Shown: piece after piece, positions 29,455-61,668 of the stretch | Layout: each line of letters opens with the position of its first letter | Numbering within the stretch: the first letter of the stretch is position 1 | IMG/VR virus record: IMGVR_UViG_3300017917_001342 | Span: 434,001 to 498,000 of that record | Reading direction: 5' to 3' (one strand) | Length of the DNA: 64,000 nucleotides | Notes under the pieces: generated by a model | Seen by the model: the letters and a program-made list of their open reading frames with translations, nothing else | What the model was told of the DNA's origin: nothing | Database searches by the model: none | Position numbers and translations under genes: made by a program

Positions 29455-29469
29455 TTGTTGTCGTTGATC

Positions 29470-30666: not shown

Positions 30667-30702
30667 CTTGTGTGTCTCCGTAGTGTTGTTGTCGATGAGT
30701 TA

Positions 30703-30730
30703 CATTTAGCACATTATTAGATACTGTCAA
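30703..30730 (-). promoter_or_regulatory. Possible sigma70-type promoter for the AAA+ gene
   Basis: TTGACA-16-TAAATG preceded by TGTGC; the -10 is imperfect. Confidence 0.45.
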
Positions 30731-30914
30731 CCACTTTTTTCTCTGTGGGTTGCAGTGTTTCTGTGTCAATCCATTGAGCGCAGAATGCTTCGGTGTAATC
30801 AGCATTGGGATTAGGACCGATACCAAACCGACGCTTGTAGCTGGCAACAAACTGTGCCCACAACTGCGGATTGCAGCTATAGCAGGGTTCATTGCAAGGG
30901 AATTCGTCAGTCAT
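30717..30914 (-). CDS. Small Cys-containing hypothetical protein (65 aa)
   Basis: CNEPCYSC motif; on the operon strand. Confidence 0.5.
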   Translation of the reverse strand: MTDEFPCNEPCYSCNPQLWAQFVASYKRRFGIGPNPNADYTEAFCAQWIDTETLQPTEKKVVDSI

Positions 30915-38600: not shown

Positions 38601-39109
38601 GATGTAAATGTATCACGTGTCATCAATTCGTGTAGACTATGACACCAAACACCTGGGTTAGATGCTTTGAAATCAGTGTCATCTATTTTCAACATTGTGT
38701 TGTAGTTGAACTGTTTGATATAGGGTATTTTGACACTGATCTGTGGAATGAAATTATCATACTCGCACCATCCAGATTCTAACACTGTGTTGCAATGCGT
38801 TACATCAAAATCCAATGTTACTAGATAATCCAGCTTCAACAATGGTTTGATCATACTATCCCATTTTTGCATAGCATCGTACAAATCCACGTTGTATTTT
38901 GACATTGTTGCAGCAGGATCAAAACACTGATTTGCACCAACAAATATGTGCTTACAATCATGCTTGTTTGCATAATCTACAATAGCAATTGGACTTTGAA
39001 TATCTACCACAAACAGTGTGCGTTGACCATATGCCGGTGTGCGTTCTATTTCTGTACCAACAAAAAATACCACATTGTTTTTTACGCCGTCTGCATAATC
39101 TCGTTCCAT
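38567..39109 (-). CDS. Uncharacterised protein directly downstream of dpdA (180 aa)
   Basis: FFVGTEIERTPAYGQRTLFVV...KIDDTDFKASNPGVWC; its start overlaps the dpdA stop (TAATG). Confidence 0.75.
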   Translation of the reverse strand: MERDYADGVKNNVVFFVGTEIERTPAYGQRTLFVVDIQSPIAIVDYANKHDCKHIFVGANQCFDPAATMSKYNVDLYDAMQKWDSMIKPLLKLDYLVTLDFDVTHCNTVLESGWCEYDNFIPQISVKIPYIKQFNYNTMLKIDDTDFKASNPGVWCHSLHELMTRDTFTSWQEYGKDQPI

Positions 39110-40767: not shown

Positions 40768-40797
40768 GTCTAAGTATGGTCACTGGTTATTATATTG

Positions 40798-47597: not shown

Positions 47598-47630
47598 TAT
47601 GTTTCCGGCCGGTGTAAATACCTACGACGA

Positions 47631-47636
47631 TATTTA
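47631..47636 (-). promoter_or_regulatory. Late promoter core TAAATA forming one arm of an inverted repeat (47615-47636)
   Basis: Minus strand reads TAAATATC-GTCGTA-GGTATTTA, upstream of the tail fibre ATG at 47597. Confidence 0.55.
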
Positions 47637-47666
47637 GTTGAACCTGTTTTTGTAAAACCGGGTTGG

Positions 47667-49685
47667 TCAATTGTAATCTAATACGATTTTAAATTCTCCA
47701 GAGGTACTAGACCCTGGATTTATAAATGCTTTGACACTGGTTGTAGATAATACTGGATATGACAATGTTGTTGTGTATAGACCCACTGTTGTTGGATCAA
47801 TTAATGCACCGTCCATTAATAAACCATGCACAGTGTCAGTGCCAATTTCAATGTTGCTGCTGTTGTCGTTGAATGCCTGTATGATTTCGATGTTTAATCT
47901 AGTCAAAGTTTTAGTCGGCGCTAGTATACCAACTGTAACAGGACTAGTACTGAGATAACTGCCGGTTGCAGTAAAACTATTCACTAGTGTTGTATCACCA
48001 GATGTAGTGTTGCCAACGTTTTGACCATTCTGACTTAGCCCTAGTTGCATCCATACAGTCGGACCGGTATCAACTGCTACATATGCTTGGTTGTGACCAG
48101 CACCGTCGTTATAAACAAACGCAATAGCACCTCGTGTGGGTGTTAGTGCATTTCTAGCTGCAATATCTTGTACAAAGTATCCAAACGCAACACCAGTTGG
48201 ACCTGTTGGACCTGTTAATTGGCTTAGACTTGATATTGACCATGCGATAAGGTCAACCTGATCACCTGCAACAGACGGTGCATTTAATGTAACAGTTATA
48301 CCATCATCTGCTGTGTACTCAGTTGGCGGTAATTTGAGTCCATTTACATACACATCTATATATGGTGCTGTATATAGAGCATTGAATATAGTCTGGCCGC
48401 TTGTAGCGGTGTAGTTATATTCTTGGTATGCACCAACTGCGGCCGGACCAGTTGGACCTGTTACATCGCTGGCAGCACCAGTTGGACCTATAAAACCCTG
48501 TGGACCAGTAGGACCAGTTACTACGCTGTCTGCGCCAGTCGGGCCAATAGGACCAGTAGGACCGCCTAACGGACCAGTGGGACCTGTAGCACCTACTCCT
48601 GTTGCTCCCGTAGCACCAGTTGGTCCAGTAGGACCTGCTGCACCACCTACGCCTAGACGTTGCCAATTTGCATTACCAAGTGTAGGGTTAATACAAATGT
48701 ATGCAGTGTTTGTGCCGATGTCTATCCAAAGACTACCGTAACTGTAACCAAATGCTTCATCATCGTAGATAGTAGGCGGTACTACACTGGTAAAATTGTT
48801 TAGAGGTCCTGATAAACTGCCTTGTGATAATTTTACTGCGCTGGTATTGTTTATTTTTATAAACAATGGCATAGCAAAATTATTTGGTTTAACTGCGGTT
48901 AGTTTTCCCGGTACAGTGGTACTTAGATATAGGACATCACCTGGATTACCAGGCAGTGTAGGTAAATCATAAAGTACTTTGCCTTTTGGTTCCCAGCTAA
49001 AGTAATCATATCCAGGAATGCCTAATTGTCTTACAGTACCAATTACATTAACAGTTGAAATGTCATCAGCAATTGCCAGCGCATAGGTGCCATCAGATTT
49101 AAGATAGATCTGATCGCCTATATCAAATCCATTGCTGGGTTGTAAAACAGTTAACAGATTCTGTTTAATGTTTCTAGCATTGAATTTGCTAATAACATCT
49201 TCTAAAAATCCCGGATAGGGTTGAAGAAAACTGTTGTATAAGGTTAGTGTATGGAATACTGGAATGCCATCTTCGTCTAACGCAAAAATAAAACCAGGCT
49301 CACCTGTTGCTGCAACACCGTCTGGAGCAGAAAACTGCTCATATCTTCCGGTATCTTCTATTGTACAAACCAGTGTTGTGCTGTTAGTTAATAGTGGGTC
49401 TATTGCAATGATCTGGCAGCATTTACCAGTGGATGCTTCCGCATACCACATGCCTACTTTGATATCTAATGCATTATAAACATAGAGTTGTTCGGTACTG
49501 AAACTGCTGTGGTTTTGTTGAGTTACAGCAGCAGTCATAATAAAACGATATGGTTGCGGTGCTGGCCCGCCAGCCCACCATTGATCTTCTCCGTATATAG
49601 GACCTTCGTCTACAGGCCAATACCCATCAGGTACAATACTGATATTGTCTACATATAACGTAATGATAGGAAGTATAGATGCCAT
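47667..49685 (-). CDS. Collagen-like tail fibre/virion appendage protein (672 aa)
   Basis: Central (Gly-Pro-Thr)n tract, followed by the YTATSGQT...VYVNG fibre module. Confidence 0.75.
48438..48653 (-). repeat. Gly-X-Thr collagen-like coding repeat
   Basis: [13 protein letters not shown]... interrupted triplet repeat. Confidence 0.9.
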
Positions 49686-49698
49686 CAGTTAAATCCTA

Positions 49699-50763
49699 TC
49701 ATGCTGTGAATATCAGCGTCACCCAGAGATATCCATTGCCGGATGCAGGTACACCTGTATTACCAGGTGACAATGCATATAAACTTGTACTGTTAACAGT
49801 AGTACTCAGCGCAGAATAGCTACCAGTTGTAGCACCAGATGGTATTGTTTGTCTAAATGCTCCGGCTGGTAATACACCCGGCCCGCCTTGACAAGATATC
49901 ATAACAGGATAGAGATTTCTGTTGTGATTTACAGTGATCTGTGTATCGCCCAGTCTTGTGATTTGACCTAATGTGATATTTGTTAAATTGTCAACATAGT
50001 CAGATGGCAATATTACACCGTCTGCAAACAGCAATCTGAAATTGATAAGCGATGTTGCAGCAGGGCCTGTTGCACCAGTTGGTCCTACAACACTAGAACC
50101 AGTTGCACCAGTTGGACCTGTAATTGTGCTAGCTGCACCAGTTGGGCCTTGATCTCCCTGTGGTCCTGTAGCACCTTGATCACCTTGACTACCAGTAGGA
50201 CCAGTTGGACCGCCTAAAGGACCAGTAGGACCAGTTACAGTACTATCTGCACCTTGAGGACCAGTTACGCCAGTAGGACCAGTTGGACCTAACGGACCAG
50301 GTGGGCCCATTGCACCACCGCCGCTACCACCGGATGGTAATGGATTGCTAGGAGCAATTGCGCCATAATTTAAAAGTATTTGAAGAACTTCGCCTACTAG
50401 ATAGGAATTACTTGGTGGTGGCACCAAATAGGTTCTGTCAATTTTTGCACGAACCCAAACATAGTTGCCAGAGAAACTATATGCATAGTTACCTGTATCA
50501 CCAGTTTGTCCTGTGGGATATGCAGGGTCTAGTGGATATTGTACATATGGTGCAGTTGTACCAATTGGTATATCAAACCAGTCGAGTTCACCCGGGTCTC
50601 TAGCTAGACTGCCCTGAATGTATATACGACCAGTAAAATTGCTAAGCGATATACTAACGGTATGATTGTTACCGATAGTGTTATTGTAGCCAGCGCCTTT
50701 TTGTTTCTGGCCTGTTACATTGATTTGTTCGTTGGTAGTTGATAAAAGAATTACACTGATCAT
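49699..50763 (-). CDS. Collagen-like virion protein (354 aa)
   Basis: Central GPT/GAT/GPQ tract; late promoter upstream. Confidence 0.75.
50055..50320 (-). repeat. Gly-X-Thr collagen-like coding repeat
   Basis: [30 protein letters not shown]... Confidence 0.9.
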
Positions 50764-51036: not shown

Positions 51037-51369
51037 TTATACACGAGGTTTTGGTTTTCTACCACGTTTGCGGCCAGTTGATCTGTTACTGCCATCTGCA
51101 TTTATGTTGTAGACTTCTGCGTATCTGTCTAAACTCATGCCTTCTATACTGGTAATTAGATCCATTGATATTTTTATTGCTGCTGAGGTATACGGGTCCC
51201 TCAGCAGCAAAATGTATCCATCTACAGCACCGTCGATTTTATCTATTACCATATCTCGATAATGATGAGTGACTGTTCCATATTTAGAATGCTGTGGTAT
51301 TTTTGCTGTAACCACAGTGTCTTCAACTAATACTCCTGATAGAATCAATCGTTCTATAACTGCTGTCAT
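51037..51369 (-). CDS. Hypothetical protein with basic C-terminal GRKRGRKPK motif
   Basis: ATGA overlap with the clpA stop. Confidence 0.7.
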   Translation of the reverse strand: MTAVIERLILSGVLVEDTVVTAKIPQHSKYGTVTHHYRDMVIDKIDGAVDGYILLLRDPYTSAAIKISMDLITSIEGMSLDRYAEVYNINADGSNRSTGRKRGRKPKPRV

Positions 51370-53660
51370 TCATTGACCTCAGTAATACTGGTAGAATCTA
51401 ACAATAGCAATTCTGTTTCATTAGTGAATTCCGGATTGCTAAGATAGTCAAAAACCAACTGCGAATCCTTTACAGTGATCATCACTGCACCACCGTTTTT
51501 CAATTTACCAAACAGTATTTCTTTACTGATAGGCTTTTTAACATTTTCTGCAATGACTCTCGACAGCGGTCTAGCACCCATCTTTTTGTCAAAGCCCTTG
51601 TCAATAAGCCACTGTTTAGCAGCAGGATCACAAATTATGTTAACATTCTTTTTAGCAGACAGTTCATTCATTTGATTGATAAACTTGTCAACAATGTGTT
51701 CCATATTTTCTTTAGCAAGGCTACCAAACCGTACTATTGCATCAAGACGGTTACGGAATTCGGGAGTAAAGTATCTATTGATTGCTTGAGTATCTTCGTC
51801 TCTCAACGCATTCTCACTACCAAACCCGATACGGTCTTTTTCCATATCTGCTGCACCTAGGTTACTGGTAAAGATAACAATTGCATTTCTTGCACTTGCA
51901 CTCTTACCTTGACTACCTGTCACAGTACCGCTATCCATCATAGCAAGGAACACGTTATAAACATCGGGGTGTGCTTTTTCGATTTCATCAAACAGCAACA
52001 CACAATGCGGATGTGTTTCTAATTCATTGATAAGAAGACCGCCACCTGCTCCACCGTCGCTGTATCCTACATAACCCGGAGGGCTACCTAGGAATTTACT
52101 GACAGTGTGTCGTTCTTGGAATTCGCTCATATCAAATTTAGTAAAGTGAATTCCCAGACTCTTTGCCAATTGTTTAGCAACTTCTGTTTTACCTACACCA
52201 CTTGGCCCACTAAACAGGAAACTACCTATAGTTTTGTCATTTTCACGTAGACCGCTACGGCTCATGTAGATTGCATCAGTTACACGATTAATTGCTTCGT
52301 CTTGTCCGAAGATCACTGTTTTAAGATCAGACTCTAAACGTTCTAGACGATCTGCTTCTTTACTCTTAACTGAAGTCACTGGCACTTTGGCAACACGGCT
52401 TACTTCTGCTTCGATTTCAGTTTTAGTAATAGTTTTAATACGTAGTTCTTCTGGGCGTATTTTTTGCCATGCTGCTGCACTGTCAATTACATCAATTGCT
52501 TTGTCTGGCAAAAATTTATCATGCATATGACGGCTAGTAAGTTCAACTGCTGCATCCAGTGCCGCGGTTTCATATTGCACGCCATGGAATTCTTCGTAGT
52601 ATTTGGCAATACCTCTGAGAATACGCTTGCTGTCCTCGATGCTGGGTTCAAAAATATCAAGTTTTTGGAAACGTCGTACCATTGCACGGTCTTTTTCAAA
52701 ATGCTTGCGATATTCTTCAGCAGTTGTACTACCTATGCAGCGAATGTCGCCTCGACTCAGAGCCGGTTTAAGCATGTTGGCAGCATCCATACTGCCTGAA
52801 CCACCGCCACTGCTACCTGCACCCATGATCATATGTATTTCATCAATGAACATAATGTGTTCAGGTAGTGCTGTAAACGCAGCAATGATATGCTTCATGC
52901 GTTCTTCAAAGTCACCGCGGAATTTTGTACCTGCTACTAGGCTTGCAATATCTAGATTCCAAATTGTGCAGTTAGCAAGACTTTCTGGTACATCGCCTTC
53001 AACAATGCGTTTTGCAAGACCTTCGACAATAACAGTTTTACCAACACCAGGGTCACCTGTCATAATGACATTGTGTTTGTTGCGTCTTGCAAGTATTTGA
53101 CAGATTTGTTCAACTTCGCGTTCACGTCCGATCAATGGGTCAATACGACCCGCTTCGGCTTTTGAATTAAGATTGATACAATATGTCTGCAATATTTCTA
53201 TAGCAGAATTTTCATCCATTGTTGATTGTTCTTCTGCTGCAACCTGATTTATCTGTGCAACTATTTTGTCTTTTGATGCAGAGTGCTGTTGAATGATCCA
53301 ACTTGCAGGACTATCTTGAATGCCATACAGTGCAAGGTAGATGTCTTCTGGACCAATTTCTTTTCTGCCACTAAACATGCTGTGTGTTTTGGCTTTTTTA
53401 ATAACCTGTGCAAGCAATGTAGTGTGTCTTGGTTGATATGAACCCTGTTTAACAATTACATGATTGCGATCATCGTTTAACCAATCGCTAGTATCTTTGA
53501 TCATTGCATCAAGATCGCCGCCTGTGCGTTTGATTAGTTTTTGAATAATACCATTTTCAAGCAGTCCAGCCAATAGATGTTCAAGAGTCACTAATTCGTG
53601 ATTCATGCTTGCAGCCAATTGGTATGCACGTTGAATAGTCTGTTCGAAGCTGTTTTCCAT
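51366..53660 (-). CDS. clpA: ClpA-type Hsp100 AAA+ unfoldase
   Basis: Clp N domain; NBD1 GDPGVGKT/FIDEIH; NBD2 GPSGVGKT/LLFDEIEKAHP; IGF ClpP-docking loop; no ClpB middle domain. Confidence 0.92.
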   Translation of the reverse strand: MENSFEQTIQRAYQLAASMNHELVTLEHLLAGLLENGIIQKLIKRTGGDLDAMIKDTSDWLNDDRNHVIVKQGSYQPRHTTLLAQVIKKAKTHSMFSGRKEIGPEDIYLALYGIQDSPASWIIQQHSASKDKIVAQINQVAAEEQSTMDENSAIEILQTYCINLNSKAEAGRIDPLIGREREVEQICQILARRNKHNVIMTGDPGVGKTVIVEGLAKRIVEGDVPESLANCTIWNLDIASLVAGTKFRGDFEERMKHIIAAFTALPEHIMFIDEIHMIMGAGSSGGGSGSMDAANMLKPALSRGDIRCIGSTTAEEYRKHFEKDRAMVRRFQKLDIFEPSIEDSKRILRGIAKYYEEFHGVQYETAALDAAVELTSRHMHDKFLPDKAIDVIDSAAAWQKIRPEELRIKTITKTEIEAEVSRVAKVPVTSVKSKEADRLERLESDLKTVIFGQDEAINRVTDAIYMSRSGLRENDKTIGSFLFSGPSGVGKTEVAKQLAKSLGIHFTKFDMSEFQERHTVSKFLGSPPGYVGYSDGGAGGGLLINELETHPHCVLLFDEIEKAHPDVYNVFLAMMDSGTVTGSQGKSASARNAIVIFTSNLGAADMEKDRIGFGSENALRDEDTQAINRYFTPEFRNRLDAIVRFGSLAKENMEHIVDKFINQMNELSAKKNVNIICDPAAKQWLIDKGFDKKMGARPLSRVIAENVKKPISKEILFGKLKNGGAVMITVKDSQLVFDYLSNPEFTNETELLLLDSTSITEVNE

Positions 53661-54175
53661 TAGCGTCCCTTTGTCAAAATAGCTTTAAGCCTAGCGTTCT
53701 TAGCGGCTTTTTTCTTTGCTAGCATAAGCTTAACTGGTCCTACACGATCGTCAATCAGTATTCCTTGCAAATGGTCAAATTCGTGCAAGAATATTCTTGC
53801 CCACCATTCATCAAAGTCAGTTACCTGTTGATTACCGTGTTCATCTCGATACATGGCTTTGATACGTTTGCTACGTGGTATATCTAACACAAGCCCTGGT
53901 ATGCTCAAACAGCCTTCTGGTTGTACAGACATTTCGTCGCTGGCTTCTATTACCACAGGATTAATAAAAACGTAGTCTTGTCCTTCGAGACTGATTACAA
54001 ACAAACTGAGATCACTACCAACCTGCGGTGCAGCTAAACCAACTCCGCCATGTTTTTTAAGTGTATCAAACATGTCGCGAATCAGTGTTTGATGATTGAC
54101 AATATCTTCCGGTTCAATGACAGTGGTCTTTTGCCTAAGTATGGCATTTGGTTTTTTAACGATATCTAATATCAT
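53660..54175 (-). CDS. def: Peptide deformylase
   Basis: GVGLAAPQ, EGCLS, HEFDH. Confidence 0.95.
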   Translation of the reverse strand: MILDIVKKPNAILRQKTTVIEPEDIVNHQTLIRDMFDTLKKHGGVGLAAPQVGSDLSLFVISLEGQDYVFINPVVIEASDEMSVQPEGCLSIPGLVLDIPRSKRIKAMYRDEHGNQQVTDFDEWWARIFLHEFDHLQGILIDDRVGPVKLMLAKKKAAKNARLKAILTKGR

Positions 54176-55044
54176 AAAGTTGGTTCGCCTCTTTGTTGTG
54201 CTATTGTTTTGATTTGCTCAAACTGTTCAACATTTAAATCTTTTGGTATACTGATGTTAACAGTGATAAACAAATCACCGCGTTGTCTTGCATTGTTGTG
54301 TACAGGCATACCGTTTCCGGCTACTCGTAAAATTGCACCAGTCTGTGTGCCTGCCGGAATGTTAATAGACAGATGTGTACCATCTATAGCTGTTAGCTCA
54401 CGCTTTGTTCCAACTATTGCAGATAGTGCATCTAACTTCAATGCCATGTGCAGATGCGGTCCATCTCTCCTAAAAACAGGATGATCGTTGATACTCACTG
54501 TTACAAACAAATCACCTGGTGGTAAATTGTTGATAGACTTGTCACCGTAACCTTGATAGCGCAATCGTGTACCATGTTGCACACCTGCTGGTATGTTGAC
54601 AACTATGTTTCTAGATTGGCCATTTACTTCAAAGTTTATCGGTAAACTTTTACCTGCAAATGCTTCTTCTAATGTGATATTCAGAGTAAATTGATAGTCT
54701 TTGTTTTTTACAGGATGTTGTTGTCTAAATGCCTGTCCAAAGAACTGATTGATCATGTCGTCAAATGGGTTACCATGACCAAAATCAAATGTAAACCCAC
54801 CTGGTCCAAACGGCGATCCGCCATTCATATTACCAAACTTGCGCTGTTGGTCATATTGAGCACGTTTTTGCGGGTCGCTTAATATATCATTGGCTTCGTT
54901 TATTTGTTTAAACTTAGCTTCAGCATCGGGATTATCTTTGTTGAGATCCGGATGCCATTTTTTTGCGAGATTGCGATACGCAGTTTTTATTTCATCCTGC
55001 GACGCAGAGTCTGATAATCCTAAAGTACTATAATGGTCTGTCAT
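54172..55044 (-). CDS. dnaJ: Class II DnaJ (CbpA-like) co-chaperone
   Basis: J domain with HPD, G/F-rich linker, C-terminal GDL/LRVAGNGMP domains; no zinc finger. Confidence 0.9.
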   Translation of the reverse strand: MTDHYSTLGLSDSASQDEIKTAYRNLAKKWHPDLNKDNPDAEAKFKQINEANDILSDPQKRAQYDQQRKFGNMNGGSPFGPGGFTFDFGHGNPFDDMINQFFGQAFRQQHPVKNKDYQFTLNITLEEAFAGKSLPINFEVNGQSRNIVVNIPAGVQHGTRLRYQGYGDKSINNLPPGDLFVTVSINDHPVFRRDGPHLHMALKLDALSAIVGTKRELTAIDGTHLSINIPAGTQTGAILRVAGNGMPVHNNARQRGDLFITVNISIPKDLNVEQFEQIKTIAQQRGEPTL

Positions 55045-55899: not shown

Positions 55900-56622
55900 A
55901 TGCAGATTCTTATACCAATGAGCGGAGCCGGCAAGAGATTTGCCGATATGGGTTATCAAAAACCAAAACCTTTAATAGAGTTTTTTGGTAAACCTATGAT
56001 AGAACATGTGTTGGAAAATCTAGGTGCAGACAACGATTACATTCTCTGTGTGCAAAAAGCACACTATGATGCAGACCCAACTCTGTTCGAAAGATTAAAA
56101 ACCAAAGTTAAAAGTTTATCTATAGTTCTAGTAAACGGTGTAACACAGGGTGCAGCAGAAACCTGTCTGCTTGCAAAACAGCTATTGGATCTAGATAAAC
56201 CGTTGTTCATTGCCAACTGTGATCAAATGATGGTATGGGATCAAACACATTTTGAAAATTGGTTTGCAGCAGAGAACCTGGATGGTGTTATGTTTGTGTT
56301 TGACAGCGACAGTACAAAAAACAGTTATGTAGAATTAGATAGCAACGGTATTGCTGTTAGAACTGCTGAGAAACAGGTTATCAGTCCCTATGCTACCAAC
56401 GGCATCTATGTATGGAAACGTGCAGGCGACTTTGTCTGGGCAGCCGAAAAGATGATTGCAGATGATATACGTGTAAACAACGAATTCTATGTGTGTCCTG
56501 TATACAATGAAAACATTGCAAGAGGTGATCGTATAGGCATCTACTATCCAACTGAGCATTGGCCTATTGGAACACCAGAAGACCTGGACATCTACATAAA
56601 GGCACACTATGAAACTGTTTGA
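55900..56622 (+). CDS. Sugar-phosphate nucleotidyltransferase (BcbE-like)
   Basis: IPMSGAGKRF...PKPLI, GAAET, ANCDQ, EKQVIS, NEFYV, GTPEDL. Confidence 0.85.
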   Translation: MQILIPMSGAGKRFADMGYQKPKPLIEFFGKPMIEHVLENLGADNDYILCVQKAHYDADPTLFERLKTKVKSLSIVLVNGVTQGAAETCLLAKQLLDLDKPLFIANCDQMMVWDQTHFENWFAAENLDGVMFVFDSDSTKNSYVELDSNGIAVRTAEKQVISPYATNGIYVWKRAGDFVWAAEKMIADDIRVNNEFYVCPVYNENIARGDRIGIYYPTEHWPIGTPEDLDIYIKAHYETV

Positions 56623-56941
56623 TCCTGACGAATTTAAAGGCGGATGGTTTATAGGAGATTTTGAACCTAGTATTTGGCGTACAACTGGTTTTGAAATAGG
56701 TTATAAACATCATATTGCAGGCGAAGCATGGCCTGCACACTACCATGAACACATGGACGAAGTTACTTTTCTTCTAGAAGGTACAATGCAAATTTGCAAT
56801 CAGACCATAACTGGTCCTATTATATTTTTAATAGGCCGTAATGAAATCGCTGACCCCGAATTTATAACAGACTGCAAGGTATTCATAATAAAAACTCCGT
56901 CTGTACCCGGAGATAAAGTTTTAATTGGAGATAAAACATGA
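56609..56941 (+). CDS. Cupin-fold protein (possible sugar epimerase/isomerase)
   Basis: GGWFIGDFEP, HYHEHMDEVTFLLEG cupin metal motif. Confidence 0.75.
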   Translation: MKLFDPDEFKGGWFIGDFEPSIWRTTGFEIGYKHHIAGEAWPAHYHEHMDEVTFLLEGTMQICNQTITGPIIFLIGRNEIADPEFITDCKVFIIKTPSVPGDKVLIGDKT

Positions 56942-58161
56942 GCGCAATTGACATTGTGAGAGACGAAAAAAATCTTGCAAAATATTTTTATGTAACATAC
57001 GACGTTGAAAGTACAAAAAGCGTATACGATGCTGCCTGGAATATTGCAGTCGGACAAAGTATAGGTAATCCAAATACTCGCAGTATTTGGGAAACTGACG
57101 ATATGATCGAAGCATACAGTGCTAAGATTTTACGCAATAGTAATTTTGAAAAGAAAAAAGGCAAAGTTGTAATTGCATACCCCAATGCTAATATTGACTG
57201 GGACACCGATGGTATTGCACAGCTATTGTGTATAGTACAAGGTGGTCAGGTTGATATTGACAGCATTAAAAAATGCAGAGTGTTGGATATAGAAATACAT
57301 CCTCAAATAATAGACAGCCACTTTAAAAAGCCTGCGCATGGTATAACAGGTATGCGCGAGTTCACTAACACCTATGGTAAACCAATGTTCGGCGGTATCG
57401 TAAAACCAAAAACAGGTATTACTCCTCAGGTACTGTTGGACATGACCAAAGAACTTGTAGAGGGTGGTGTTAACTTTATCAAAGAAGATGAAATTCTCAG
57501 CAACCCTGCTGTATGTAGATTGCAAGATCGAGTAGAACTTATCAGCAATTACATACAAGGTAAGAACGTAGTATACTGTTTCTGTATCAACAGTGATCCT
57601 GCATACGTAGTAGACCGCGCACGCTTTGTTGCACAGAATGGCGGTAATGGTGTGCATGTTAATATTTGGAGCGGATTAGGCAGCTATCGCAGTATACGCA
57701 ACGCAGACCTCGGTCTGTTTATACACTATCAAAAGAGCGGCGACAAAGTAATTACAGGTAAACAAAATCCCTTTGGTATTGAGTGGACAGTGCTTTGTAA
57801 ACTGGCTGCAATGTGTGGTGTAGACACTATTCATGCAGGTATGTGGGGCGGATATCTCAGCGACGACGAAGAGGAACTGCGTAAAACACTTGCTGTACTG
57901 CATGATAGAAACGTATTACCTGCACTAAGCTGTGGTATGCATCCTGGTATTGTTAACGCAACATCTGAGAAATTTGGTGTAGATTTCCTTGCTAACGTTG
58001 GCGGTGCTATTCACGGACACCCAGGTGGTACACTTGCTGGCGCTAAGGCTATGCGTCAAGCAATAGATAAGACTCCGGGTCCAGAATTCAAAACTGCAAT
58101 TGACAAATGGGGTTATGAAACCAACGGTGGTTCAATGCCGGAATGGGTATTGGAATTCTGA
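56938..58161 (+). CDS. RuBisCO-like protein (form IV RLP)
   Basis: GGIVKPKTG, FIKEDE, DTIHAG, LSCGMHP, VGGAIHGHP; the Lys334 position is Tyr. Confidence 0.9.
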   Translation: MSAIDIVRDEKNLAKYFYVTYDVESTKSVYDAAWNIAVGQSIGNPNTRSIWETDDMIEAYSAKILRNSNFEKKKGKVVIAYPNANIDWDTDGIAQLLCIVQGGQVDIDSIKKCRVLDIEIHPQIIDSHFKKPAHGITGMREFTNTYGKPMFGGIVKPKTGITPQVLLDMTKELVEGGVNFIKEDEILSNPAVCRLQDRVELISNYIQGKNVVYCFCINSDPAYVVDRARFVAQNGGNGVHVNIWSGLGSYRSIRNADLGLFIHYQKSGDKVITGKQNPFGIEWTVLCKLAAMCGVDTIHAGMWGGYLSDDEEELRKTLAVLHDRNVLPALSCGMHPGIVNATSEKFGVDFLANVGGAIHGHPGGTLAGAKAMRQAIDKTPGPEFKTAIDKWGYETNGGSMPEWVLEF

Positions 58162-58667
58162 TAGAAAGGTATAGGATTTTGCCATCTGTAATAATTGCAC
58201 ATAGAGGGTTGTTGGAGGGACCAGATGTAAATCTGCAGAATCGTCCAGATCAGGTGAAGAAAGCAATTGGCTTAGGCTTTCAAGTTGAAGTTGATGTGTG
58301 GTATATAGATGGCAAATGGTTTTTAGGACACGACGGACCTGAGCATAGTATAGATTGGCAGTTTCTAGCTGATCACAGCAATGACCTTTGGATACACTGT
58401 AAAAATCTAAATGCGTTCTTTGAGCTAAAAACTGATAGATCACATCAGTTAAATTACTTTTATCACGACAGTGACGCAGTTGTGTTAACAGCTAAAAACC
58501 ACGTTTGGACATATTTTGGTAAACGCGAAACCATGCATCGCAGCAGTGTATGTGTAATGCCGGAAGTTAGTTATGAGTGGGAAGAAATAGTACAAATGGC
58601 AACAAACAATCAATGGTTTGCCATTTGTACGGATTACCCAAGAAAGCTCAAGGAATGTCTCGCGTAG
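58143..58667 (+). CDS. GDPD/PI-PLC-like phosphodiesterase-fold protein (start uncertain, possibly TTG 58179)
   Basis: IIAHRG, GFQVEVDVW, FLGHD, LWIHCKN. Confidence 0.7.
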   Translation: MGIGILIERYRILPSVIIAHRGLLEGPDVNLQNRPDQVKKAIGLGFQVEVDVWYIDGKWFLGHDGPEHSIDWQFLADHSNDLWIHCKNLNAFFELKTDRSHQLNYFYHDSDAVVLTAKNHVWTYFGKRETMHRSSVCVMPEVSYEWEEIVQMATNNQWFAICTDYPRKLKECLA

Positions 58668-59317
58668 CACTTTGCTTTGCAGGTCTACCAAGAATGTCTA
58701 CAATCAGCACAGATAGCTGGCGTAGATTAATATCTCAACACCATACAGATGTTTTTGTACATACTTGGGCTGATAATGATCCGCAACAGCTACAGCAATC
58801 TATTGCTGCAACCTATGCACCAAAAGAATTGATTGTTGAACAACAACGTCAATTTGATACAGCTATCTATACTGATCGCATATGGGCATACCGTAGTTTT
58901 CCCAACAATGTATTGAGCATGTGGTACAGCATAGCACAGAGCCTACAGATGGCTGATAGATATGCTGCAAAATACAACATCACATATGATTATGTTTGTC
59001 GTGCTAGATTTGACTGGCACTGTAATCAATTTGATTTGCAACCATTTGATGGCTTAACAGTACCAGATGATCCCGGTTTAAGTGGACATCATTTTCAACA
59101 TAGAGGCCACTGGTATGTTGCACATAACGATCAATTTGGCTATGGCAGCATGAATGTCATGCGCGATTATGGTGAGACCTTTTATCGCATACCATGGTTA
59201 TATCAAATCGACAAAATAGACTTTTGCAGTGAATTATTCCTTACAACAAATATGATTACAAAAAAAATTCCTGTAAAATTACAAAAGGGATGGGTTTATA
59301 GGATGGTACGCGAATGA
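58655..59317 (+). CDS. Glycosyltransferase-like protein
   Basis: VALCFAGLPR, DVFVHTW, SMWYS, YDYVCRARFD, NDQF; start moved to the ATG at 58655 (AAGGA RBS). Confidence 0.5.
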   Translation: MSRVALCFAGLPRMSTISTDSWRRLISQHHTDVFVHTWADNDPQQLQQSIAATYAPKELIVEQQRQFDTAIYTDRIWAYRSFPNNVLSMWYSIAQSLQMADRYAAKYNITYDYVCRARFDWHCNQFDLQPFDGLTVPDDPGLSGHHFQHRGHWYVAHNDQFGYGSMNVMRDYGETFYRIPWLYQIDKIDFCSELFLTTNMITKKIPVKLQKGWVYRMVRE

Positions 59318-60387
59318 AAATAGCTGTATATACAATTGCACTTAATGAAATAAAACACTGTGAACGCTGGGCAGAATCTGTAAAAGATGCAGACTATCGA
59401 ATCGTTTTAGACACTGGTAGTACAGATGGTACAGTAGAAAAACTGCGCGAACTAGGTGTAACTGTATACGAACAGCAGTTTACACCTTGGCGTTTTGATG
59501 TTGCACGCAATGCTGCATTGAATTGTGTACCAGAAGATGCTGATATCTGTATAAGCCAAGACATGGATGAATTTTTAGAGCCGGGATGGCGTGCAAAAAT
59601 GGAAGCAGTTTGGCAGAAAGGTCAAACTACTAGATTGGCTTACACCTATGTATTTGATTATAGACCAGGTGGTAAGAATGACGGCTATCGTATGGATAAG
59701 ATTCATGCTAGACAGGGTTACGAATGGCGCAGGCCAGTGCATGAAACTGTATGGAGCACACTGAGTTACGAAAACATTGCAGAAGATCTGTCTATTGTAT
59801 TGAATCAAATACAAGACAGAAACAAAACAACTCGCAGCAACTATTTGCCATTGATGGCTATGGCCACAGCAGAAAATCCCAATGACAGCCAATTGAGCTT
59901 TTGGTATGGACGCGAGTTAATGTACGCAAATCAACATGAAGCTGCTATCACAGAATTGAAACGCTATCTTGATCTAGAAACCAGTCGTTGGCCAGTAGAA
60001 CGTAGCGAAGCTATGATTTATCTGTCTAGACTAACAGACAGCAGCAAATTTGACTATTTGCACAGGGCATTGATCTGTGCGCCAGAACGCAGACAGGTAT
60101 GGTTAGAACTTGCTAGATATTATTACAGTAAACAAGACTGGCATGGATTGCTATGGGCCTGTGGTAGCGGGCTTGAACACAGCCGCAGGGACAACAGCTA
60201 TCTTGATCATGCAGATGCCTGGGGCAATCAACTACACGATTTTGGAAGCATTGCAGCAGCTAACTTAAAATGGTACGAAAAAGCTGTGGAATGGTGCCAA
60301 TTAGCGATAAACATACAACCAACTGATGATAGATTGCGTGCAAACTTAAATTGGATGCAAAGCAAACTAGGAGAGATTTCAAAATGA
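59314..60387 (+). CDS. GT2 glycosyltransferase with C-terminal TPR domain
   Basis: IAVYTIALNE, LDTGSTDGT, FDVARNAAL, QDMDE, followed by TPR-like helices. Confidence 0.85.
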   Translation: MKIAVYTIALNEIKHCERWAESVKDADYRIVLDTGSTDGTVEKLRELGVTVYEQQFTPWRFDVARNAALNCVPEDADICISQDMDEFLEPGWRAKMEAVWQKGQTTRLAYTYVFDYRPGGKNDGYRMDKIHARQGYEWRRPVHETVWSTLSYENIAEDLSIVLNQIQDRNKTTRSNYLPLMAMATAENPNDSQLSFWYGRELMYANQHEAAITELKRYLDLETSRWPVERSEAMIYLSRLTDSSKFDYLHRALICAPERRQVWLELARYYYSKQDWHGLLWACGSGLEHSRRDNSYLDHADAWGNQLHDFGSIAAANLKWYEKAVEWCQLAINIQPTDDRLRANLNWMQSKLGEISK

Positions 60388-61448
60388 AAATAGCTATATA
60401 CGGTCCGGCAAAAAACGAATTCAAACATGTCGAAGCATGGTATGACAGTTGCAAAGATGCAGACATTATCTGCGTTGCAGACACTGGTAGTACAGATGGT
60501 ACACCAGAATTAATGCGACAACTTGGTGTACAAGTTACAGATGTACGTATATCACCTTGGCGATTTGATGATGCATTTAATACAGCAATGTATCTGGTGC
60601 CCGATTGGGTCGATGTTTGTATTCGATTAGACACAGACGAGCGTCTTGTAGAAGGTTGGAGAGCAGCGTTAGAAGCAGCATGGACACCTGAAACAACACG
60701 TTTACGTTACCCTTATGTATGGAATTGGAACCCAGATGGCACACCAGGCCGTACATGGTATGGCGATCGTATCCACAAGCGAGTTGGTTACAGATGGATG
60801 GGTGCAACACACGAAGGGCTTGTTAGCAGGTTGCCGGAAATTCAAACCTATACAGACACTGTGAAGATACATCATTTCCCGGATGTAAAAAACAAATCGG
60901 GCGATTTGCCATTGCTGTTAGAATCTGTAAAAGAGTGGCCGCATGATGCTAGAATCCGTGCTTACCTTGCTAGAGAATACATGTATGCTAGAAACTACGA
61001 GAAAGCAGCAGAAACCTACAAAGAATTCCTAGGAATGAGCTGGGACACTGCCGAACGCTGTCAGGCAATGACATCACTGGCACAAGCAGAACCAGAAAAT
61101 AAAATCTACTGGTTAAGGCAAGCTGCGTATGAAGTACCAACACACAGAGAACCTCTAGTATATCTTGCACAACACTATTACGACAAAAGTGAATGGCAAA
61201 AGTGTTATGAATATGCACACAAGGCTTTGGCAATTACCAGACATCCTATGGATTATACCTGCACACCGGAAGCATGGGGATGGCAACCACACGATTTGTT
61301 AAGCATTGCAGCATGGAATCTCAAGCTGTACAAAGAAAGTCTCGAACATGCTAAACTGGCATTGTCACATGCTACACATGATGTAAGGCTGCAAAACAAT
61401 GTCAAGCTCATTGAAGAATTTATAGCTAAGAATCTCAGTGACAGTTGA
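60384..61448 (+). CDS. GT2 glycosyltransferase with C-terminal TPR domain (paralogue)
   Basis: IAIYGPAKNE, DTGSTDGT, LDTDE, HEGL, TPR helices; start moved to the ATG at 60384. Confidence 0.85.
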   Translation: MKIAIYGPAKNEFKHVEAWYDSCKDADIICVADTGSTDGTPELMRQLGVQVTDVRISPWRFDDAFNTAMYLVPDWVDVCIRLDTDERLVEGWRAALEAAWTPETTRLRYPYVWNWNPDGTPGRTWYGDRIHKRVGYRWMGATHEGLVSRLPEIQTYTDTVKIHHFPDVKNKSGDLPLLLESVKEWPHDARIRAYLAREYMYARNYEKAAETYKEFLGMSWDTAERCQAMTSLAQAEPENKIYWLRQAAYEVPTHREPLVYLAQHYYDKSEWQKCYEYAHKALAITRHPMDYTCTPEAWGWQPHDLLSIAAWNLKLYKESLEHAKLALSHATHDVRLQNNVKLIEEFIAKNLSDS

Positions 61449-61641: not shown

Positions 61642-61668
61642 AAAAAAGGGCGCCTAAGCGCCCTTTTT
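61642..61668. terminator. Bidirectional rho-independent terminator
   Basis: AAAAAA-GGGCGC-CTAA-GCGCCC-TTTTT between convergent genes. Confidence 0.9.

What the first reader, a model, noticed from the sequence alone, without database searches (positions are those of the whole stretch)
56938..58161. Phage RuBisCO-like protein with a distinctive active site
Seen, by manual alignment to spinach numbering: K175, K177, K201, D203, E204, H327 and the phosphate-binding G403/G404 are kept; K334 is Y, H294-R295 appear as Q-K (IHYQKSG), and E60 appears as G (AVGQSIG). Established: K334 is needed for carboxylation. Inference: a Mg/carbamate-dependent enolase or isomerase of a separate RLP subfamily.
Basis: partly seen in the sequence, partly recalled or inferred. 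Interest (0 to 1): 0.68.

Follow-up and report, generated by a model that had tools for sequence, protein, structure and literature searches.

The report
RuBisCO-like enzyme in glycan cassette
A 518-kb phage carries a RuBisCO relative that cannot fix CO2 and belongs to a clade, also found in SAR11, Legionella and tiny archaea, that almost always sits beside a sugar-nucleotide-forming enzyme, so it probably helps build an unusual sugar for a surface glycan.

Summary
The ORF at 56938-58161 (+, 407 aa) is real and is a RuBisCO large-chain homologue. The Mg/carbamate set (K175, K177, K201, D203, E204), H327 and the P1-phosphate glycines are kept. E60, T65, W66, N123, H294, R295, H298, K334 and G380 are replaced by G, N, P, G, Q, K, D, Y and C. 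This pattern is shared by 55 aligned relatives, so it is a selected design. The family forms its own clade (SH-aLRT 100), apart from forms I-III and from OiaX-like and MtnW-like RLPs. It scores far below every curated equivalog cutoff.

It is not new as a sequence clade. It fits the phage/Beckwithbacteria "Form IV-like" RLPs of Jaffe et al. 2019, whose function is unknown. It is also not phage-specific: Pelagibacter, Legionella, Nonomuraea, Azospirillum and CPR/DPANN genomes carry it.

The context appears unreported in the papers I could search. In about 130 loci the RLP sits beside a sugar-1-phosphate-type nucleotidyltransferase (about 93%). A small cupin (fused to the transferase in 22 loci) and a miniature GDPD-fold phosphodiesterase usually accompany it, inside glycan-building islands.

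Best reading: a non-carboxylating enolising isomerase or epimerase that feeds a nucleotide-activated sugar pathway. The substrate is unknown.

The parts
55900..56622 (+). Sugar-1-phosphate-type nucleotidyltransferase (240 aa); the RLP's near-universal neighbour.
   Evidence: Pfam NTP_transferase 42.4 bits. Best NCBIfam hits are archaeal GlmU N-domain, MurU and RmlA, all below their cutoffs. Best PDB hit is 4evw, an NDP-sugar pyrophosphorylase, E 1.9e-16. It lies next to the RLP in 80 of 83 viral loci and 45 of 50 cellular loci. It is the only PF00483 gene in the 518-kb genome.
56609..56941 (+). Small single-domain cupin (110 aa). Its stop overlaps the RLP start codon (56938-56941).
   Evidence: Invariant H44-x-H46-x4-E51-x6-G58 cupin motif in 27 homologues. 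The profile hits cupins in PDB: 1y3t 9.4e-6, 3d82 1.7e-5, and the 113-aa 'mannose-6-phosphate isomerase' 7zvm 2.3e-4. Present in 76 of 83 viral loci. Fused C-terminally to the nucleotidyltransferase in 22 ORFs.
56938..58161 (+). RuBisCO-like protein (407 aa) of the 'Form IV-like' clade; this is the finding itself.
   Evidence: as set out in the observation check.
58143..58667 (+). Miniature GDPD-fold phosphodiesterase-like protein (174 aa; homologues about 145-160 aa). Its start overlaps the RLP stop by 19 nt.
   Evidence: Invariant H20, R21, G22, N33, E49, D51, G62, H63, H85, K87, H108, D111 and D164 in 29 homologues. The profile hits GDPD 7e0v (E 1.9e-4) over the HRG..EN..ExD..HD segment. 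AF2 model pLDDT 93.1. The six Foldseek hits at E <= 0.001 are all GDPDs, and most lower hits are too (prob 1.00, TMq 0.48-0.58). Present in 75 of 83 viral loci. Replaced by a full-length Pfam GDPD in 10 DPANN and other cellular loci.
58577..59317 (+). DUF7796 protein (246 aa from GTG; a public record starts it at residue 13). A frequent accessory gene of the cassette.
   Evidence: Pfam DUF7796 38.3 bits. Atlas clusters are mostly viral DUF7796. Found in 46 of about 130 loci by clustering. No similarity to LicD.
59314..60387 (+). GT2 glycosyltransferase with C-terminal TPR (357 aa).
   Evidence: Pfam Glycos_transf_2 plus TPR. phrog_13126 'beta-1,4-glycosyltransferase' 297.5 bits. Shared only with the closest huge-phage relatives, 6-7 loci.
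60351..61448 (+). Second GT2-TPR paralogue (365 aa).
   Evidence: phrog_13126 307.1 bits. Pfam shows weak TPR_2 and Glycos_transf_2 hits.
61643..61668 (.). Strong palindromic hairpin (11-bp stem, 6 GC pairs) flanked by A and T runs. Probably a bidirectional terminator that closes the + strand gene string.
   Evidence: This is a consensus scan only, and the total number of terminator-like sites did not exceed the shuffled controls.

Best explanation
The ORF encodes an active, non-carboxylating member of the RuBisCO superfamily. It belongs to the clade published as 'Form IV-like' RLPs.

Shown:
- It keeps the carbamylatable Lys (K182), the two acidic Mg2+ ligands (D184, E185), K156, K158, H299 and the glycine/serine phosphate cradle.
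- It has invariant replacements for E60, N123, H294 and K334, which act after enolisation in true RuBisCO.
- Its N-domain loop is also rebuilt, into the invariant motif GQSxGNPxxR.
- It is the signature gene of a mobile cassette: the RLP, a sugar-1-phosphate-type nucleotidyltransferase, usually a small cupin and usually a mini-GDPD phosphodiesterase.
- The cassette sits inside glycan-biosynthesis islands of phages, bacteria and archaea.

Inferred:
- The RLP binds a phosphorylated keto-sugar through the conserved phosphate site.
- It abstracts a proton next to the carbonyl via the Mg2+-carbamate centre and reprotonates. This makes it an isomerase, epimerase or enolase, possibly with Y306 as a new acid/base.
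- Its product is adjusted by the cupin (aldose-ketose or epimerase step) and by the GDPD-like or HAD enzyme (phosphoryl trimming).
- The product is then converted by the nucleotidyltransferase into an NDP-linked donor.
- In this phage, DUF7796 and the two GT2-TPR transferases would use that donor to decorate a host-surface or virion glycan during infection.

The identities of the substrate and of the sugar are unknown.
For: Residues and fold.

Distinct clade: the family-profile HMM scores members at 321 bits or more, against 195 or less for the best outsiders. The tree gives SH-aLRT 100 on a stem of 1.0 changes per column.

Linkage to the nucleotidyltransferase: 80 of 83 viral loci, 45 of 50 cellular loci, and 121 of 130 by clustering. 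It holds across Alphaproteobacteria, Gammaproteobacteria, Actinomycetota, Verrucomicrobiota, CPR and DPANN, and despite reshuffled order and strand.

Fusions: the partner enzymes are tied to one another by 22 nucleotidyltransferase-cupin fusions. HAD_2-nucleotidyltransferase fusions occur in 5 loci, with a sixth HAD-bearing locus and one C-terminal HAD.

GDPD: a GDPD fold of one size or another is present in 105 of 130 loci.

Wider neighbourhood: nucleotide-sugar tailoring and transfer genes. SDR epimerase/dehydratase 48 loci, DUF7796 46, DegT aminotransferase 13, FkbM/TylF/MT24 methyltransferases, and GT2. There is LicD in Legionella, and GT9 plus CTP_transf_3 in Pelagibacter.

In the window: the genes from 55900 to 61448 overlap or abut (start/stop overlaps at 56609-56622, 56938-56941, 58143-58161 and 59314-59317) and end at a hairpin.
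Against: - There are no biochemical data on any member.
- The RLP itself was never seen fused to a partner. Its link rests on adjacency, which in glycan islands can be partly guilt by association.
- The loci were not dereplicated (for example L013/L014 and L039/L040 are near-identical), so the counts overstate independent observations.
- The distal-phosphate residues are altered (R295->K, H298->D). Mono- versus bisphosphate substrates cannot be told apart.
- The nucleotidyltransferase's specificity is not assigned by any curated model.
- The cupin and GDPD are missing from some loci, such as the Legionella ones, so the pathway may differ between lineages.
- An SDR is absent from this window's cassette; the genome's two SDR genes lie far away.
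Confidence: 0.5

Rival explanations
1. The nucleotidyltransferase acts first. The RLP then works on a nucleotide-linked keto-sugar, as an NDP-sugar epimerase or isomerase alongside the cupin, much as RmlC/FdtA-type cupins do. The conserved phosphate cradle would hold part of the diphosphate.
For: SDR 4,6-dehydratase-like genes, DegT aminotransferases and sugar methyltransferases are frequent neighbours. These are classic NDP-4-keto-6-deoxy-sugar tailoring enzymes. The N-domain loop that closes the RuBisCO site is rebuilt, which could make room for a larger ligand.
Against: No RuBisCO-superfamily enzyme is known to bind a nucleotide-sugar (my own knowledge). The SDR is present in only 48 of about 130 loci and is not in this window's cassette. 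HAD-nucleotidyltransferase fusions point to chemistry on free sugar phosphates before activation.
Confidence: 0.15
2. The cassette makes a CDP-activated phospho-alcohol or polyol-phosphate, on the LicC/LicD or TarI/TarJ logic. The RLP makes the phosphorylated head group, and a phosphotransferase adds it to a glycan as a phosphodiester.
For: A LicD-family gene lies divergently beside the RLP-nucleotidyltransferase pair in Legionella drozanskii. The transferase gives weak MobA-like and IspD-like hits. GDPD enzymes act on phosphodiester head groups (family knowledge). A 2-hydroxyacid dehydrogenase is in the Pelagibacter locus.
Against: The IspD/MobA hits are below cutoff, and the best matches are sugar-1-phosphate transferases. 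I saw LicD in only one lineage. DUF7796 shows no similarity to LicD.
Confidence: 0.15
3. It is a methionine-salvage or MTA-type RLP (a DK-MTP-1-P enolase or 5-methylthioribulose-1-P isomerase) that recycles SAM by-products during infection.
For: RLPs and cupins work in sequence in the Rhodospirillum rubrum MTA-isoprenoid shunt (my own knowledge; papers listed). Methyltransferases are common in the neighbourhood.
Against: MtnW models score 129 and 98 bits against cutoffs of 409 and 514. MtnW-like RLPs form a separate clade at SH-aLRT 100 and have a different residue pattern. The phage genome has no MtnA/IF-2B or MtnB/Aldolase_II homologue. The constant partner is a nucleotidyltransferase, not a salvage enzyme.
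Confidence: 0.04
4. It is a working carboxylase/oxygenase, like form III in an AMP/RuBP nucleotide-salvage route, as the public annotations of its relatives say ('ribulose-bisphosphate carboxylase large chain').
For: Closest in sequence and fold to form III RuBisCO. Source annotations of relatives call it RuBisCO.
Against: K334, E60, N123 and H294 are all replaced in every member, and K334 is established as required for carboxylation. rubisco_III scores 191 bits against a cutoff of 497. The genome has no phosphoribulokinase and no R15P-isomerase family gene.
Confidence: 0.03
5. It is a catalytically dead scaffold or regulatory subunit that has merely kept the fold.
For: Nine of the 19 canonical active-site positions are changed.
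Against: The changed positions are themselves invariant. So are the metal ligands, K175/K177 and the phosphate cradle, across phages, bacteria and archaea at down to 34% identity. That pattern fits a conserved, redesigned active site.
Confidence: 0.03

Closest known systems
'Form IV-like' RLPs of phages and Beckwithbacteria (Jaffe, Castelle, Dupont & Banfield 2019, Mol Biol Evol; PMC6389311)
   Same: A divergent RuBisCO-superfamily clade found on IMG/VR phage scaffolds, including very large phages, and grouping with Beckwithbacteria. Key residues differ from known form IV, and the function is unknown. My family includes many IMG/VR phage contigs and a Beckwithbacteria MAG at 49% identity that nests among them.
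   Different: The paper does not describe, in the text I could read, the nucleotidyltransferase/cupin/GDPD cassette. It also does not mention the clade in SAR11, Legionella, Nonomuraea, Azospirillum or DPANN. I could not compare sequences directly because no supplements are held.
Archaeal form III RuBisCO (e.g. Pyrococcus horikoshii 2cwx/2d69, Thermococcus kodakarensis 3a12)
   Same: Best sequence match (E 1.4e-41) and best structural match (TM 0.85-0.86, 29% identity). Same Mg/carbamate ligands, K175, K177, H327, S379, G381, G403 and G404.
   Different: Lacks E60, T65, W66, N123, H294, R295, H298, K334 and G380. Scores 191 bits against a 497-bit cutoff. Forms a separate clade. No AMP-pathway partners in the genome.
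IV-NonPhoto-type RLPs: 3-oxo-isoapionate-4-phosphate decarboxylase OiaX and relatives (NCBIfam NF042437; PDB 3nwr)
   Same: Non-carboxylating superfamily members that act on phosphorylated keto-sugar acids. Second-best class by PDB sequence score (3nwr, E 4.6e-35).
   Different: OiaX-like references keep E60, T65, N123, H294, R295 and K334 and change K177. They form a separate clade at SH-aLRT 100. The query scores 148 bits against a cutoff of 700. Their role is catabolic, not in glycan-synthesis islands (my own knowledge).
IV-YkrW/MtnW DK-MTP-1-P enolase and the MtnW-like (DeepYkr-type) RLPs, including the R. rubrum RLP-plus-cupin pair
   Same: An enolisation-only use of the RuBisCO active site. 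In R. rubrum an RLP is followed by a cupin enzyme (my own knowledge).
   Different: Different residue pattern: E60 and N123 kept, K177Q, E204H, R295P, H327I/V, K334R. Separate clade. Below cutoffs. No salvage genes in the genome.
Bifunctional type II phosphomannose isomerase/GDP-mannose pyrophosphorylase, and the GmhB-HddC (HAD phosphatase then nucleotidyltransferase) step of GDP-heptose synthesis
   Same: The architectures NTP_transferase + C-terminal cupin, and HAD + NTP_transferase, recur in the cassette as fusions. This matches the logic of sugar-phosphate isomerisation, then a phosphoryl shift or trim, then nucleotidylation (family knowledge).
   Different: Here the cupin is a minimal domain of about 107 aa with no Pfam match. 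No phosphomannomutase or kinase is conserved. A RuBisCO-like protein and a mini-GDPD are added, which no described NDP-sugar pathway uses (my own knowledge; nothing found).

Membership tests
RuBisCO large-chain superfamily | N-terminal alpha/beta domain plus C-terminal TIM barrel, recognised by Pfam PF02788 and PF00016 | tested here: met
   PF00016 135.8 bits and PF02788 31.7 bits, both over cutoff. AF2 model at TM 0.85 to 2cwx/2d69.
Bona fide RuBisCO (forms I, II, III) | The complete catalytic set, including K334, E60, N123 and H294, in addition to K175, K201, D203 and E204 | tested here: not met
   K334->Y, E60->G, N123->G and H294->Q in all 55 family members. The labelled form I, II and III references keep all four.
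Bona fide RuBisCO (forms I, II, III) | Score above the curated NCBIfam cutoffs (TIGR03326, NF003252, NF010002) | tested here: not met
   191.3 against 497, 180.8 against 438, and 99.1 against 489 bits. The references pass their models.
MtnW / IV-YkrW DK-MTP-1-P enolase | Equivalog score, clade membership and methionine-salvage context | tested here: not met
   129.2 against 409 and 97.8 against 513.6 bits. MtnW-like references are a separate clade at SH-aLRT 100. No MtnA or MtnB in the genome. True Bacillus-type YkrW sequences were not in my tree. Their PDB chains (2oej, 2zvi, 3fk4) score lower than form III.
OiaX/OiaK (IV-NonPhoto) RLPs | Equivalog score and clade membership | tested here: not met
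   148 against 700 bits. Separate clade at SH-aLRT 100. Different residues at K177, H294, R295 and K334.
'Form IV-like' phage/Beckwithbacteria RLP clade (Jaffe et al. 2019) | A monophyletic group of phage-encoded RLPs together with Beckwithbacteria sequences, outside the classical form IV clades | tested here: met
   The family clade holds IMG/VR phage sequences and a Beckwithbacteria MAG (L102), and excludes all the reference groups. This fits the published description.
'Form IV-like' phage/Beckwithbacteria RLP clade (Jaffe et al. 2019) | Direct identity or co-clustering with the sequences used in that paper | not testable with these tools
   No supplementary files are held for the paper.
IV-GOS RLP clade (Tabita et al. 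2007) | Co-clustering with the Global Ocean Sampling RLP sequences that define the clade | not testable with these tools
   The defining paper is not held. Only a one-line mention was found. It is a plausible synonym because SAR11 and marine-looking contigs carry the family, but this is a lead only.
GDPD / PLC-like phosphodiesterase fold (for the neighbour at 58143-58667) | The catalytic HRG..E(N)..ExD..HD residues on a GDPD TIM-barrel fold | tested here: met
   Invariant residues. Profile hit to 7e0v. The six Foldseek hits at E <= 0.001 are all GDPDs. The barrel is shortened (about 150 aa against about 240) and there is no Pfam hit, so it is a reduced variant. Activity is untested.
Cupin superfamily (for the neighbour at 56609-56941) | Motif 1, G-x5-H-x-H-x3,4-E-x6-G, on a small beta-barrel | tested here: met
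   Invariant H44, H46, E51 and G58. Profile hits to cupin structures. A conserved motif-2 histidine was not seen, so the metal site may be atypical.

The most novel reading that the evidence does not exclude
The 'Form IV-like' RLPs are the committed enzyme of an undescribed route to a nucleotide-activated sugar or sugar-phosphate. That would be the first RuBisCO-superfamily enzyme working in glycan biosynthesis. In this route a phospho-keto-sugar is isomerised or epimerised by RuBisCO-type enolisation. It is then trimmed by a miniature GDPD or a HAD enzyme and activated by a dedicated nucleotidyltransferase. The cassette is traded between phages and hosts such as SAR11, Legionella, CPR and DPANN to vary surface glycans.
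Probability: 0.35. Interest if true: 0.8.

Novelty: new member of a known kind. Interest (0 to 1): 0.55.

Why it matters
- **Annotation.** Public pipelines label this family 'ribulose-bisphosphate carboxylase large chain'. Read at face value, that would credit phages, SAR11 and DPANN with carbon fixation. The residue pattern says these proteins do not carboxylate.
- **Function.** The function of the phage 'Form IV-like' RLPs has been open since 2019. The conserved cassette and its fusions turn that into a concrete hypothesis that can be tested at the bench.
- **Test organisms.** The clade's presence in cultured bacteria (Legionella drozanskii, L. maceachernii, L. nautarum, Nonomuraea rosea, Azospirillum oleiclasticum, a Pelagibacter strain) gives organisms to test it in.
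- **If the hypothesis holds.** It would add a new reaction class and a new physiological role (glycan building) to the RuBisCO superfamily. It would also point to a sugar modification that phages and abundant marine bacteria exchange.

Tried and rejected
- **Phage genome collection.** Megablast of 7 kb and tblastn of the RLP against the INPHARED phage genomes found nothing.
- **PHROGs.** No family matches the RLP.
- **orf110 and orf174.** Single-sequence Pfam and NCBIfam scans gave nothing. Only family profiles and a fold identified them.
- **DUF7796 as a LicD-like phosphotransferase.** Rejected by BLASTP, E 0.98. The Atlas search only returned DUF7796 clusters.
- **IV-GOS identity.** The Tabita 2007 paper is not held, and Jaffe's supplements are not held.
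- **Later literature.** Searches for later work on the clade, or for an RLP-nucleotidyltransferase link, found nothing relevant.
- **Promoters.** The scan did not exceed shuffled controls (29 sites against 22.7 +/- 5.0), so no promoter is claimed.
- **RNA genes.** No tRNA or Rfam family was found in the window.
- I labelled one reference (L170) form I from its Pfam score alone. The tree puts it with form II. This does not affect the conclusions.
- **Not run.** I also did not run complex prediction, the sequencing-run search or read laying.
Full report
**1. The observation**

The ORF 56938..58161 on the + strand (407 aa, ATG start) is present as described. It carries both RuBisCO large-chain Pfam domains: PF00016 at 135.8 bits and PF02788 at 31.7 bits. 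The best solved relative is the form III RuBisCO of Pyrococcus horikoshii (2cwx, E 1.4e-41).

I then aligned the protein with 96 relatives and references whose form was assigned by NCBIfam. Using the canonical motifs to carry spinach numbering (my own knowledge), the mapping is:

| Spinach position | Residue here | Status |
|---|---|---|
| K175 | K156 | kept |
| K177 | K158 | kept |
| K201 | K182 | kept |
| D203 | D184 | kept |
| E204 | E185 | kept |
| H327 | H299 | kept |
| S379 | S331 | kept |
| G381 | G333 | kept |
| G403, G404 | G355, G356 | kept |
| E60 | G39 | changed |
| T65 | N44 | changed |
| W66 | P45 | changed |
| N123 | G103 | changed |
| H294 | Q265 | changed |
| R295 | K266 | changed |
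| H298 | D269 | changed |
| K334 | Y306 | changed |
| G380 | C332 | changed |

Five further substitutions were not listed: T65, W66, N123, H298 and G380.

**2. This is a selected design, not decay**

In a 45-sequence alignment spanning 47-90% identity to the query, both the retained and the substituted positions are invariant. So are further family-specific residues: Q40, S41, R48, E52, D106, S267 and G268. Across 26 viral and 29 cellular members, 16 of the 19 canonical positions are identical in every sequence. The exceptions are R295 (2 of 55 have R), H298 (4 of 55 differ) and G404 (1 of 55).

The AlphaFold2 model built on that alignment is confident (mean pLDDT 93.6, pTM 0.90). It superposes best on form III RuBisCO (TM 0.85-0.86). 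The solved RLPs 2oem, 1tel, 4nas and 2qyg lie at about 0.79-0.83.

**3. The genome is a phage**

The window is bases 434001-498000 of a 518,643-bp virus record. The record has direct terminal repeats and an estimated completeness of 100%. The window also holds collagen-like tail-fibre genes, an HNH endonuclease, an exonuclease and radical-SAM genes by PHROGs. So 'phage' is right, and this is one of the very large phages.

**4. What family it is**

No curated equivalog claims it:

| NCBIfam model | Score (bits) | Cutoff (bits) |
|---|---|---|
| rubisco_III (TIGR03326) | 191 | 497 |
| form I (NF003252) | 181 | 438 |
| OiaX (NF042437) | 148 | 700 |
| MtnW (NF007095) | 129 | 409 |
| form II (NF010002) | 99 | 489 |
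| MtnW (TIGR03332) | 98 | 514 |

The word-index protein search found 2670 proteins at E <= 1e-10. The 120 listed range from 99% down to about 62% identity. A scan of IMG/VR found 103 viral loci at 46-78% identity, on contigs up to 294 kb.

A profile of the family separates members from everything else. Members score at least 321 bits, including Legionella, Nonomuraea and Azospirillum. The best outsiders, archaeal form III, score at most 195 bits.

I built a maximum-likelihood tree of 97 rows (IQ-TREE, LG+C20+F+G4, quick search, SH-aLRT support). All 55 family rows fall in one clade with support 100 on a stem of 1.0 changes per column. Forms I, II and III group together (95). OiaX-like RLPs (100) and MtnW-like RLPs (100) are separate. 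The backbone between these four groups is unresolved.

Limits of the tree: it used the quick method, and it holds no true Bacillus YkrW, IV-Photo, IV-AMC, IV-Aful or IV-GOS references. Solved YkrW, Photo and NonPhoto chains all score below form III against the query.

**5. Prior art**

Jaffe et al. (Mol Biol Evol 2019, PMC6389311) reported about 80 non-redundant 'Form IV-like' RLPs. These were on IMG/VR and groundwater phage scaffolds, including a curated phage of about 200 kb. They grouped with two Beckwithbacteria sequences as an outgroup to the other RLPs. Their key residues diverged from known form IV, and the function was left open.

My clade contains IMG/VR phage sequences and a Beckwithbacteria MAG (L102, 49% identity) nested among them. 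It therefore fits that description. I could not compare sequences directly, because no supplements are held.

The older 'IV-GOS' clade of Tabita et al. 2007 may be the same thing, since SAR11 carries the family. That paper is not held. The clade as a sequence group is therefore already known.

**6. It is not phage-specific**

A scan of one genome per prokaryotic species found 50 cellular loci at 34-58% identity. They include:
- a complete Candidatus Pelagibacter chromosome and many SAR11 single-cell genomes
- a complete Verrucomicrobiae chromosome
- Legionella drozanskii, L. maceachernii and L. nautarum, plus Tatlockia and Francisellaceae
- Nonomuraea rosea, Azospirillum oleiclasticum and Turneriella
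- Beckwithbacteria and Saccharibacteria
- Woesearchaeota, Nanoarchaeia and Micrarchaeota MAGs

Some short MAG contigs could be mis-binned phage, but the chromosomes and isolates cannot. In the tree, viral and cellular rows interleave, and starred branches force at least five switches. That indicates repeated exchange. The window's protein groups first with other huge-phage contigs (L010, L003), then with L016 and L021, and beside a group holding SAR11 sequences.

**7. The cassette**

This is the main new clue. Around the RLP in 83 viral loci, tblastn with the window's proteins gave these counts:

| Neighbour | Viral loci (of 83) |
|---|---|
| nucleotidyltransferase | 80 |
| 110-aa ORF | 76 |
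| 174-aa ORF | 75 |
| DUF7796 | 18-22 |
| GT2-TPR, DnaJ, peptide deformylase, ClpB | 6-8 (closest relatives only) |

In the 50 cellular loci the transferase is adjacent in 45, the 174-aa ORF in 23 and the 110-aa ORF in 16. Clustering all neighbour ORFs over about 130 loci gave:

| Gene family | Loci |
|---|---|
| RLP | 130 |
| nucleotidyltransferase | 121-122 |
| 174-aa family | 95 |
| stand-alone cupin | 67-68 |
| SDR epimerase/dehydratase | 48 |
| DUF7796 | 46 |

Gene order is most often transferase > cupin > RLP > 174-aa gene (> DUF7796). It is shuffled and inverted in many loci without the genes separating. The loci were not dereplicated, so the counts overstate the number of independent cases. 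The spread across phyla and two domains does not depend on that.

**8. The partner proteins**

- **Nucleotidyltransferase.** It matches PF00483. It is nearest to sugar-1-phosphate transferases: the archaeal GlmU N-domain, MurU, RmlA, and PDB 4evw at E 1.9e-16.
- **110-aa protein.** It is a minimal cupin. H-x-H-x4-E-x6-G is invariant, and its profile hits cupin structures, including a 113-aa 'mannose-6-phosphate isomerase'.
- **174-aa protein.** It is a shortened GDPD-fold enzyme. H-R-G, E-N, E-x-D, G-H-D and H-x-K are invariant. Its profile hits GDPD 7e0v. A confident model (pLDDT 93.1) has GDPDs as all six of its significant Foldseek hits.
- **Full-length GDPD.** In 10 DPANN and other cellular loci a full-length Pfam GDPD (82.8 bits) stands in place of the short form. 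Counting both forms, a GDPD fold of some size is present in 105 of 130 loci.
- **Fusions.** Fusions tie the partners together. 22 ORFs are transferase-cupin fusions, always in that order. In L039/L040, L046, L078 and L088 an N-terminal HAD_2 phosphatase/mutase domain is fused to the transferase, and L022 has a C-terminal HAD.
- **Two transferase paralogues.** A SAR11/DPANN subclade has two, one beside the RLP and one beside the GDPD.
- **Wider neighbourhood.** It consists of nucleotide-sugar tailoring and transfer genes: DegT aminotransferase, FkbM/TylF/MT24 methyltransferases and GT2. There is LicD in Legionella, and GT9, CTP_transf_3 and a 2-hydroxyacid dehydrogenase in Pelagibacter.

**9. 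Anatomy in the window**

The genes from 55900 to 61448 on the + strand overlap or abut:
- transferase and cupin share 56609-56622
- cupin stop and RLP start share 56938-56941
- RLP stop and mini-GDPD start share 58143-58161
- DUF7796 stop and GT2 start share 59314-59317

The string ends before a strong palindromic hairpin at 61643-61668. This layout suggests one transcription unit, but that is an inference. The promoter scan was not above background. The cassette's transferase is the only PF00483 gene in the whole 518-kb genome. The genome's two SDR genes are far away.

**10. Mechanism**

*Shown:*
- The Mg2+/carbamate ligands, K175, K177, H327 and the P1-phosphate cradle are conserved.
- The residues that act after enolisation in RuBisCO are all replaced. 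K334 and its partner E60 act in CO2 addition. N123 and H294 act in the later steps (established enzymology, my own knowledge).
- The N-domain loop that closes the neighbouring subunit's site is rebuilt into the invariant GQSxGNPxxR.

*Inferred:*
- The enzyme still binds a phosphate ester next to a carbonyl and abstracts the adjacent proton.
- The reaction ends with reprotonation, making it an isomerase, epimerase or enolase.
- Y306 on loop 6, C332, and R48/E52 are candidate new catalytic or binding groups.
- K266, D269 and H299 shape the distal pocket. The H298->D change argues weakly against a second phosphate.
- The near-obligate pairing with a nucleotidyltransferase suggests the product is destined for nucleotide activation. 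So do the cupin fusions (as in type II phosphomannose isomerase/GDP-mannose pyrophosphorylase) and the HAD fusions (as in GmhB followed by HddC).
- The activated product would then be transferred to a glycan. In this phage the candidates are DUF7796 and the two GT2-TPR enzymes.
- Whether the target is the host envelope or the virion cannot be told.

I put about 0.8 on 'active, non-carboxylating enolising enzyme of a distinct clade'. I put about 0.5 on the full cassette model.

**11. Rivals**

- **RLP acts on the NDP-sugar, after the transferase (0.15).** This fits the SDR/DegT neighbourhood. It has no precedent in the superfamily.
- **CDP-phospho-alcohol or polyol-phosphate logic (0.15).** This is suggested by LicD in Legionella and the GDPD partner. 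The transferase looks more like sugar-1-phosphate enzymes, and DUF7796 is not LicD-like.
- **Methionine salvage (0.04) and true carboxylation (0.03).** Scores, residues, clade position and the lack of MtnA/R15P isomerase, MtnB and phosphoribulokinase in the genome all speak against these.
- **A dead scaffold (0.03).** This does not fit invariant metal ligands across domains.

**12. Verdict**

The gene is a new member of a described but uncharacterised clade.

The value added here is threefold. First, the clade's host range, including cultured bacteria. Second, the conserved transferase/cupin/mini-GDPD cassette and its fusions. Third, a warning that public annotations call these proteins RuBisCO.

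No reads tools, complex prediction or the large representative search were used. No alternative genetic code was invoked, and no step needed referral.

Noticed in passing
window 58143-58667 and alignment A1 (homologues in L003-L089): The GDPD-like partner has only about 145-175 residues, against about 240 for normal GDPDs. It still keeps the catalytic H-R-G, E-N, E-x-D, H-D and H-x-K residues and folds confidently (pLDDT 93.1). A reduced barrel of this kind may be of structural interest in its own right.
   Followed up: partly
L101, L103, L107, L110-L113, L115-L122, L125, L139 (cellular loci): A SAR11 single-cell/DPANN subclade carries two nucleotidyltransferase paralogues, one beside the RLP and one beside the GDPD (full-length in DPANN). 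Their loci usually lack the cupin. This hints at a two-branch or two-step activation variant.
   Followed up: partly
L039/L040 10572-11966, L046 3774-5135, L078 4602-5972, L088 4916-6271, L022 5580-6683, L025 3786-6407: HAD_2-nucleotidyltransferase fusions and one transferase-HAD fusion occur. L025 encodes an 874-aa protein with about 520 unassigned N-terminal residues ahead of the transferase-cupin part.
   Followed up: partly
Relatives P0004, P0070, P0092, P0093 and members of their clusters: Source annotations name this family 'ribulose-bisphosphate carboxylase large chain'. Given the active-site residues this is a likely systematic mis-annotation. It could inflate counts of viral or SAR11 carbon-fixation genes.
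   Followed up: partly
window 51366-55044 (- strand): A ClpB-like AAA+ chaperone (764 aa), peptide deformylase (171 aa) and a DnaJ with its C-terminal domain (290 aa) lie divergently upstream of the cassette. The same trio sits in the same place in the closest huge-phage relatives (L003, L008).
   Followed up: partly
window 3-8909 (+ strand): A giant ORF of at least 2968 aa runs off the 5' end of the window. It was not examined.
   Followed up: no
window 42819-50763 (- strand): A 1592-aa ORF is followed by two ORFs (672 and 354 aa) with collagen-like tail-fibre PHROG matches, probably a tail-fibre module. The neighbouring 552-aa and 366-aa ORFs (39109-41898) have no PHROG match.
   Followed up: partly
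window 19176-21922 (+ strand): Two adjacent radical-SAM-domain ORFs (447 and 468 aa) lie within a long + strand string of unassigned genes (about 12-22 kb).
   Followed up: no
window 28000-30800: A local GC peak (0.49 against about 0.40 elsewhere) covers an HNH endonuclease ORF (28103-29386, phrog_1314, 385 bits). It also covers a pair of long ORFs that overlap on opposite strands (29443-30720 + and 29470-30666 -). Only one of that pair can be the real gene, and the patch may be a mobile insertion.
   Followed up: no
L127 (Nonomuraea rosea) 3087-4232: A phage-integrase-family gene lies about 1.2 kb from the cassette's nearest gene (the GDPD-like ORF) in this actinomycete. This is consistent with the cassette arriving on a mobile element.
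   Followed up: no
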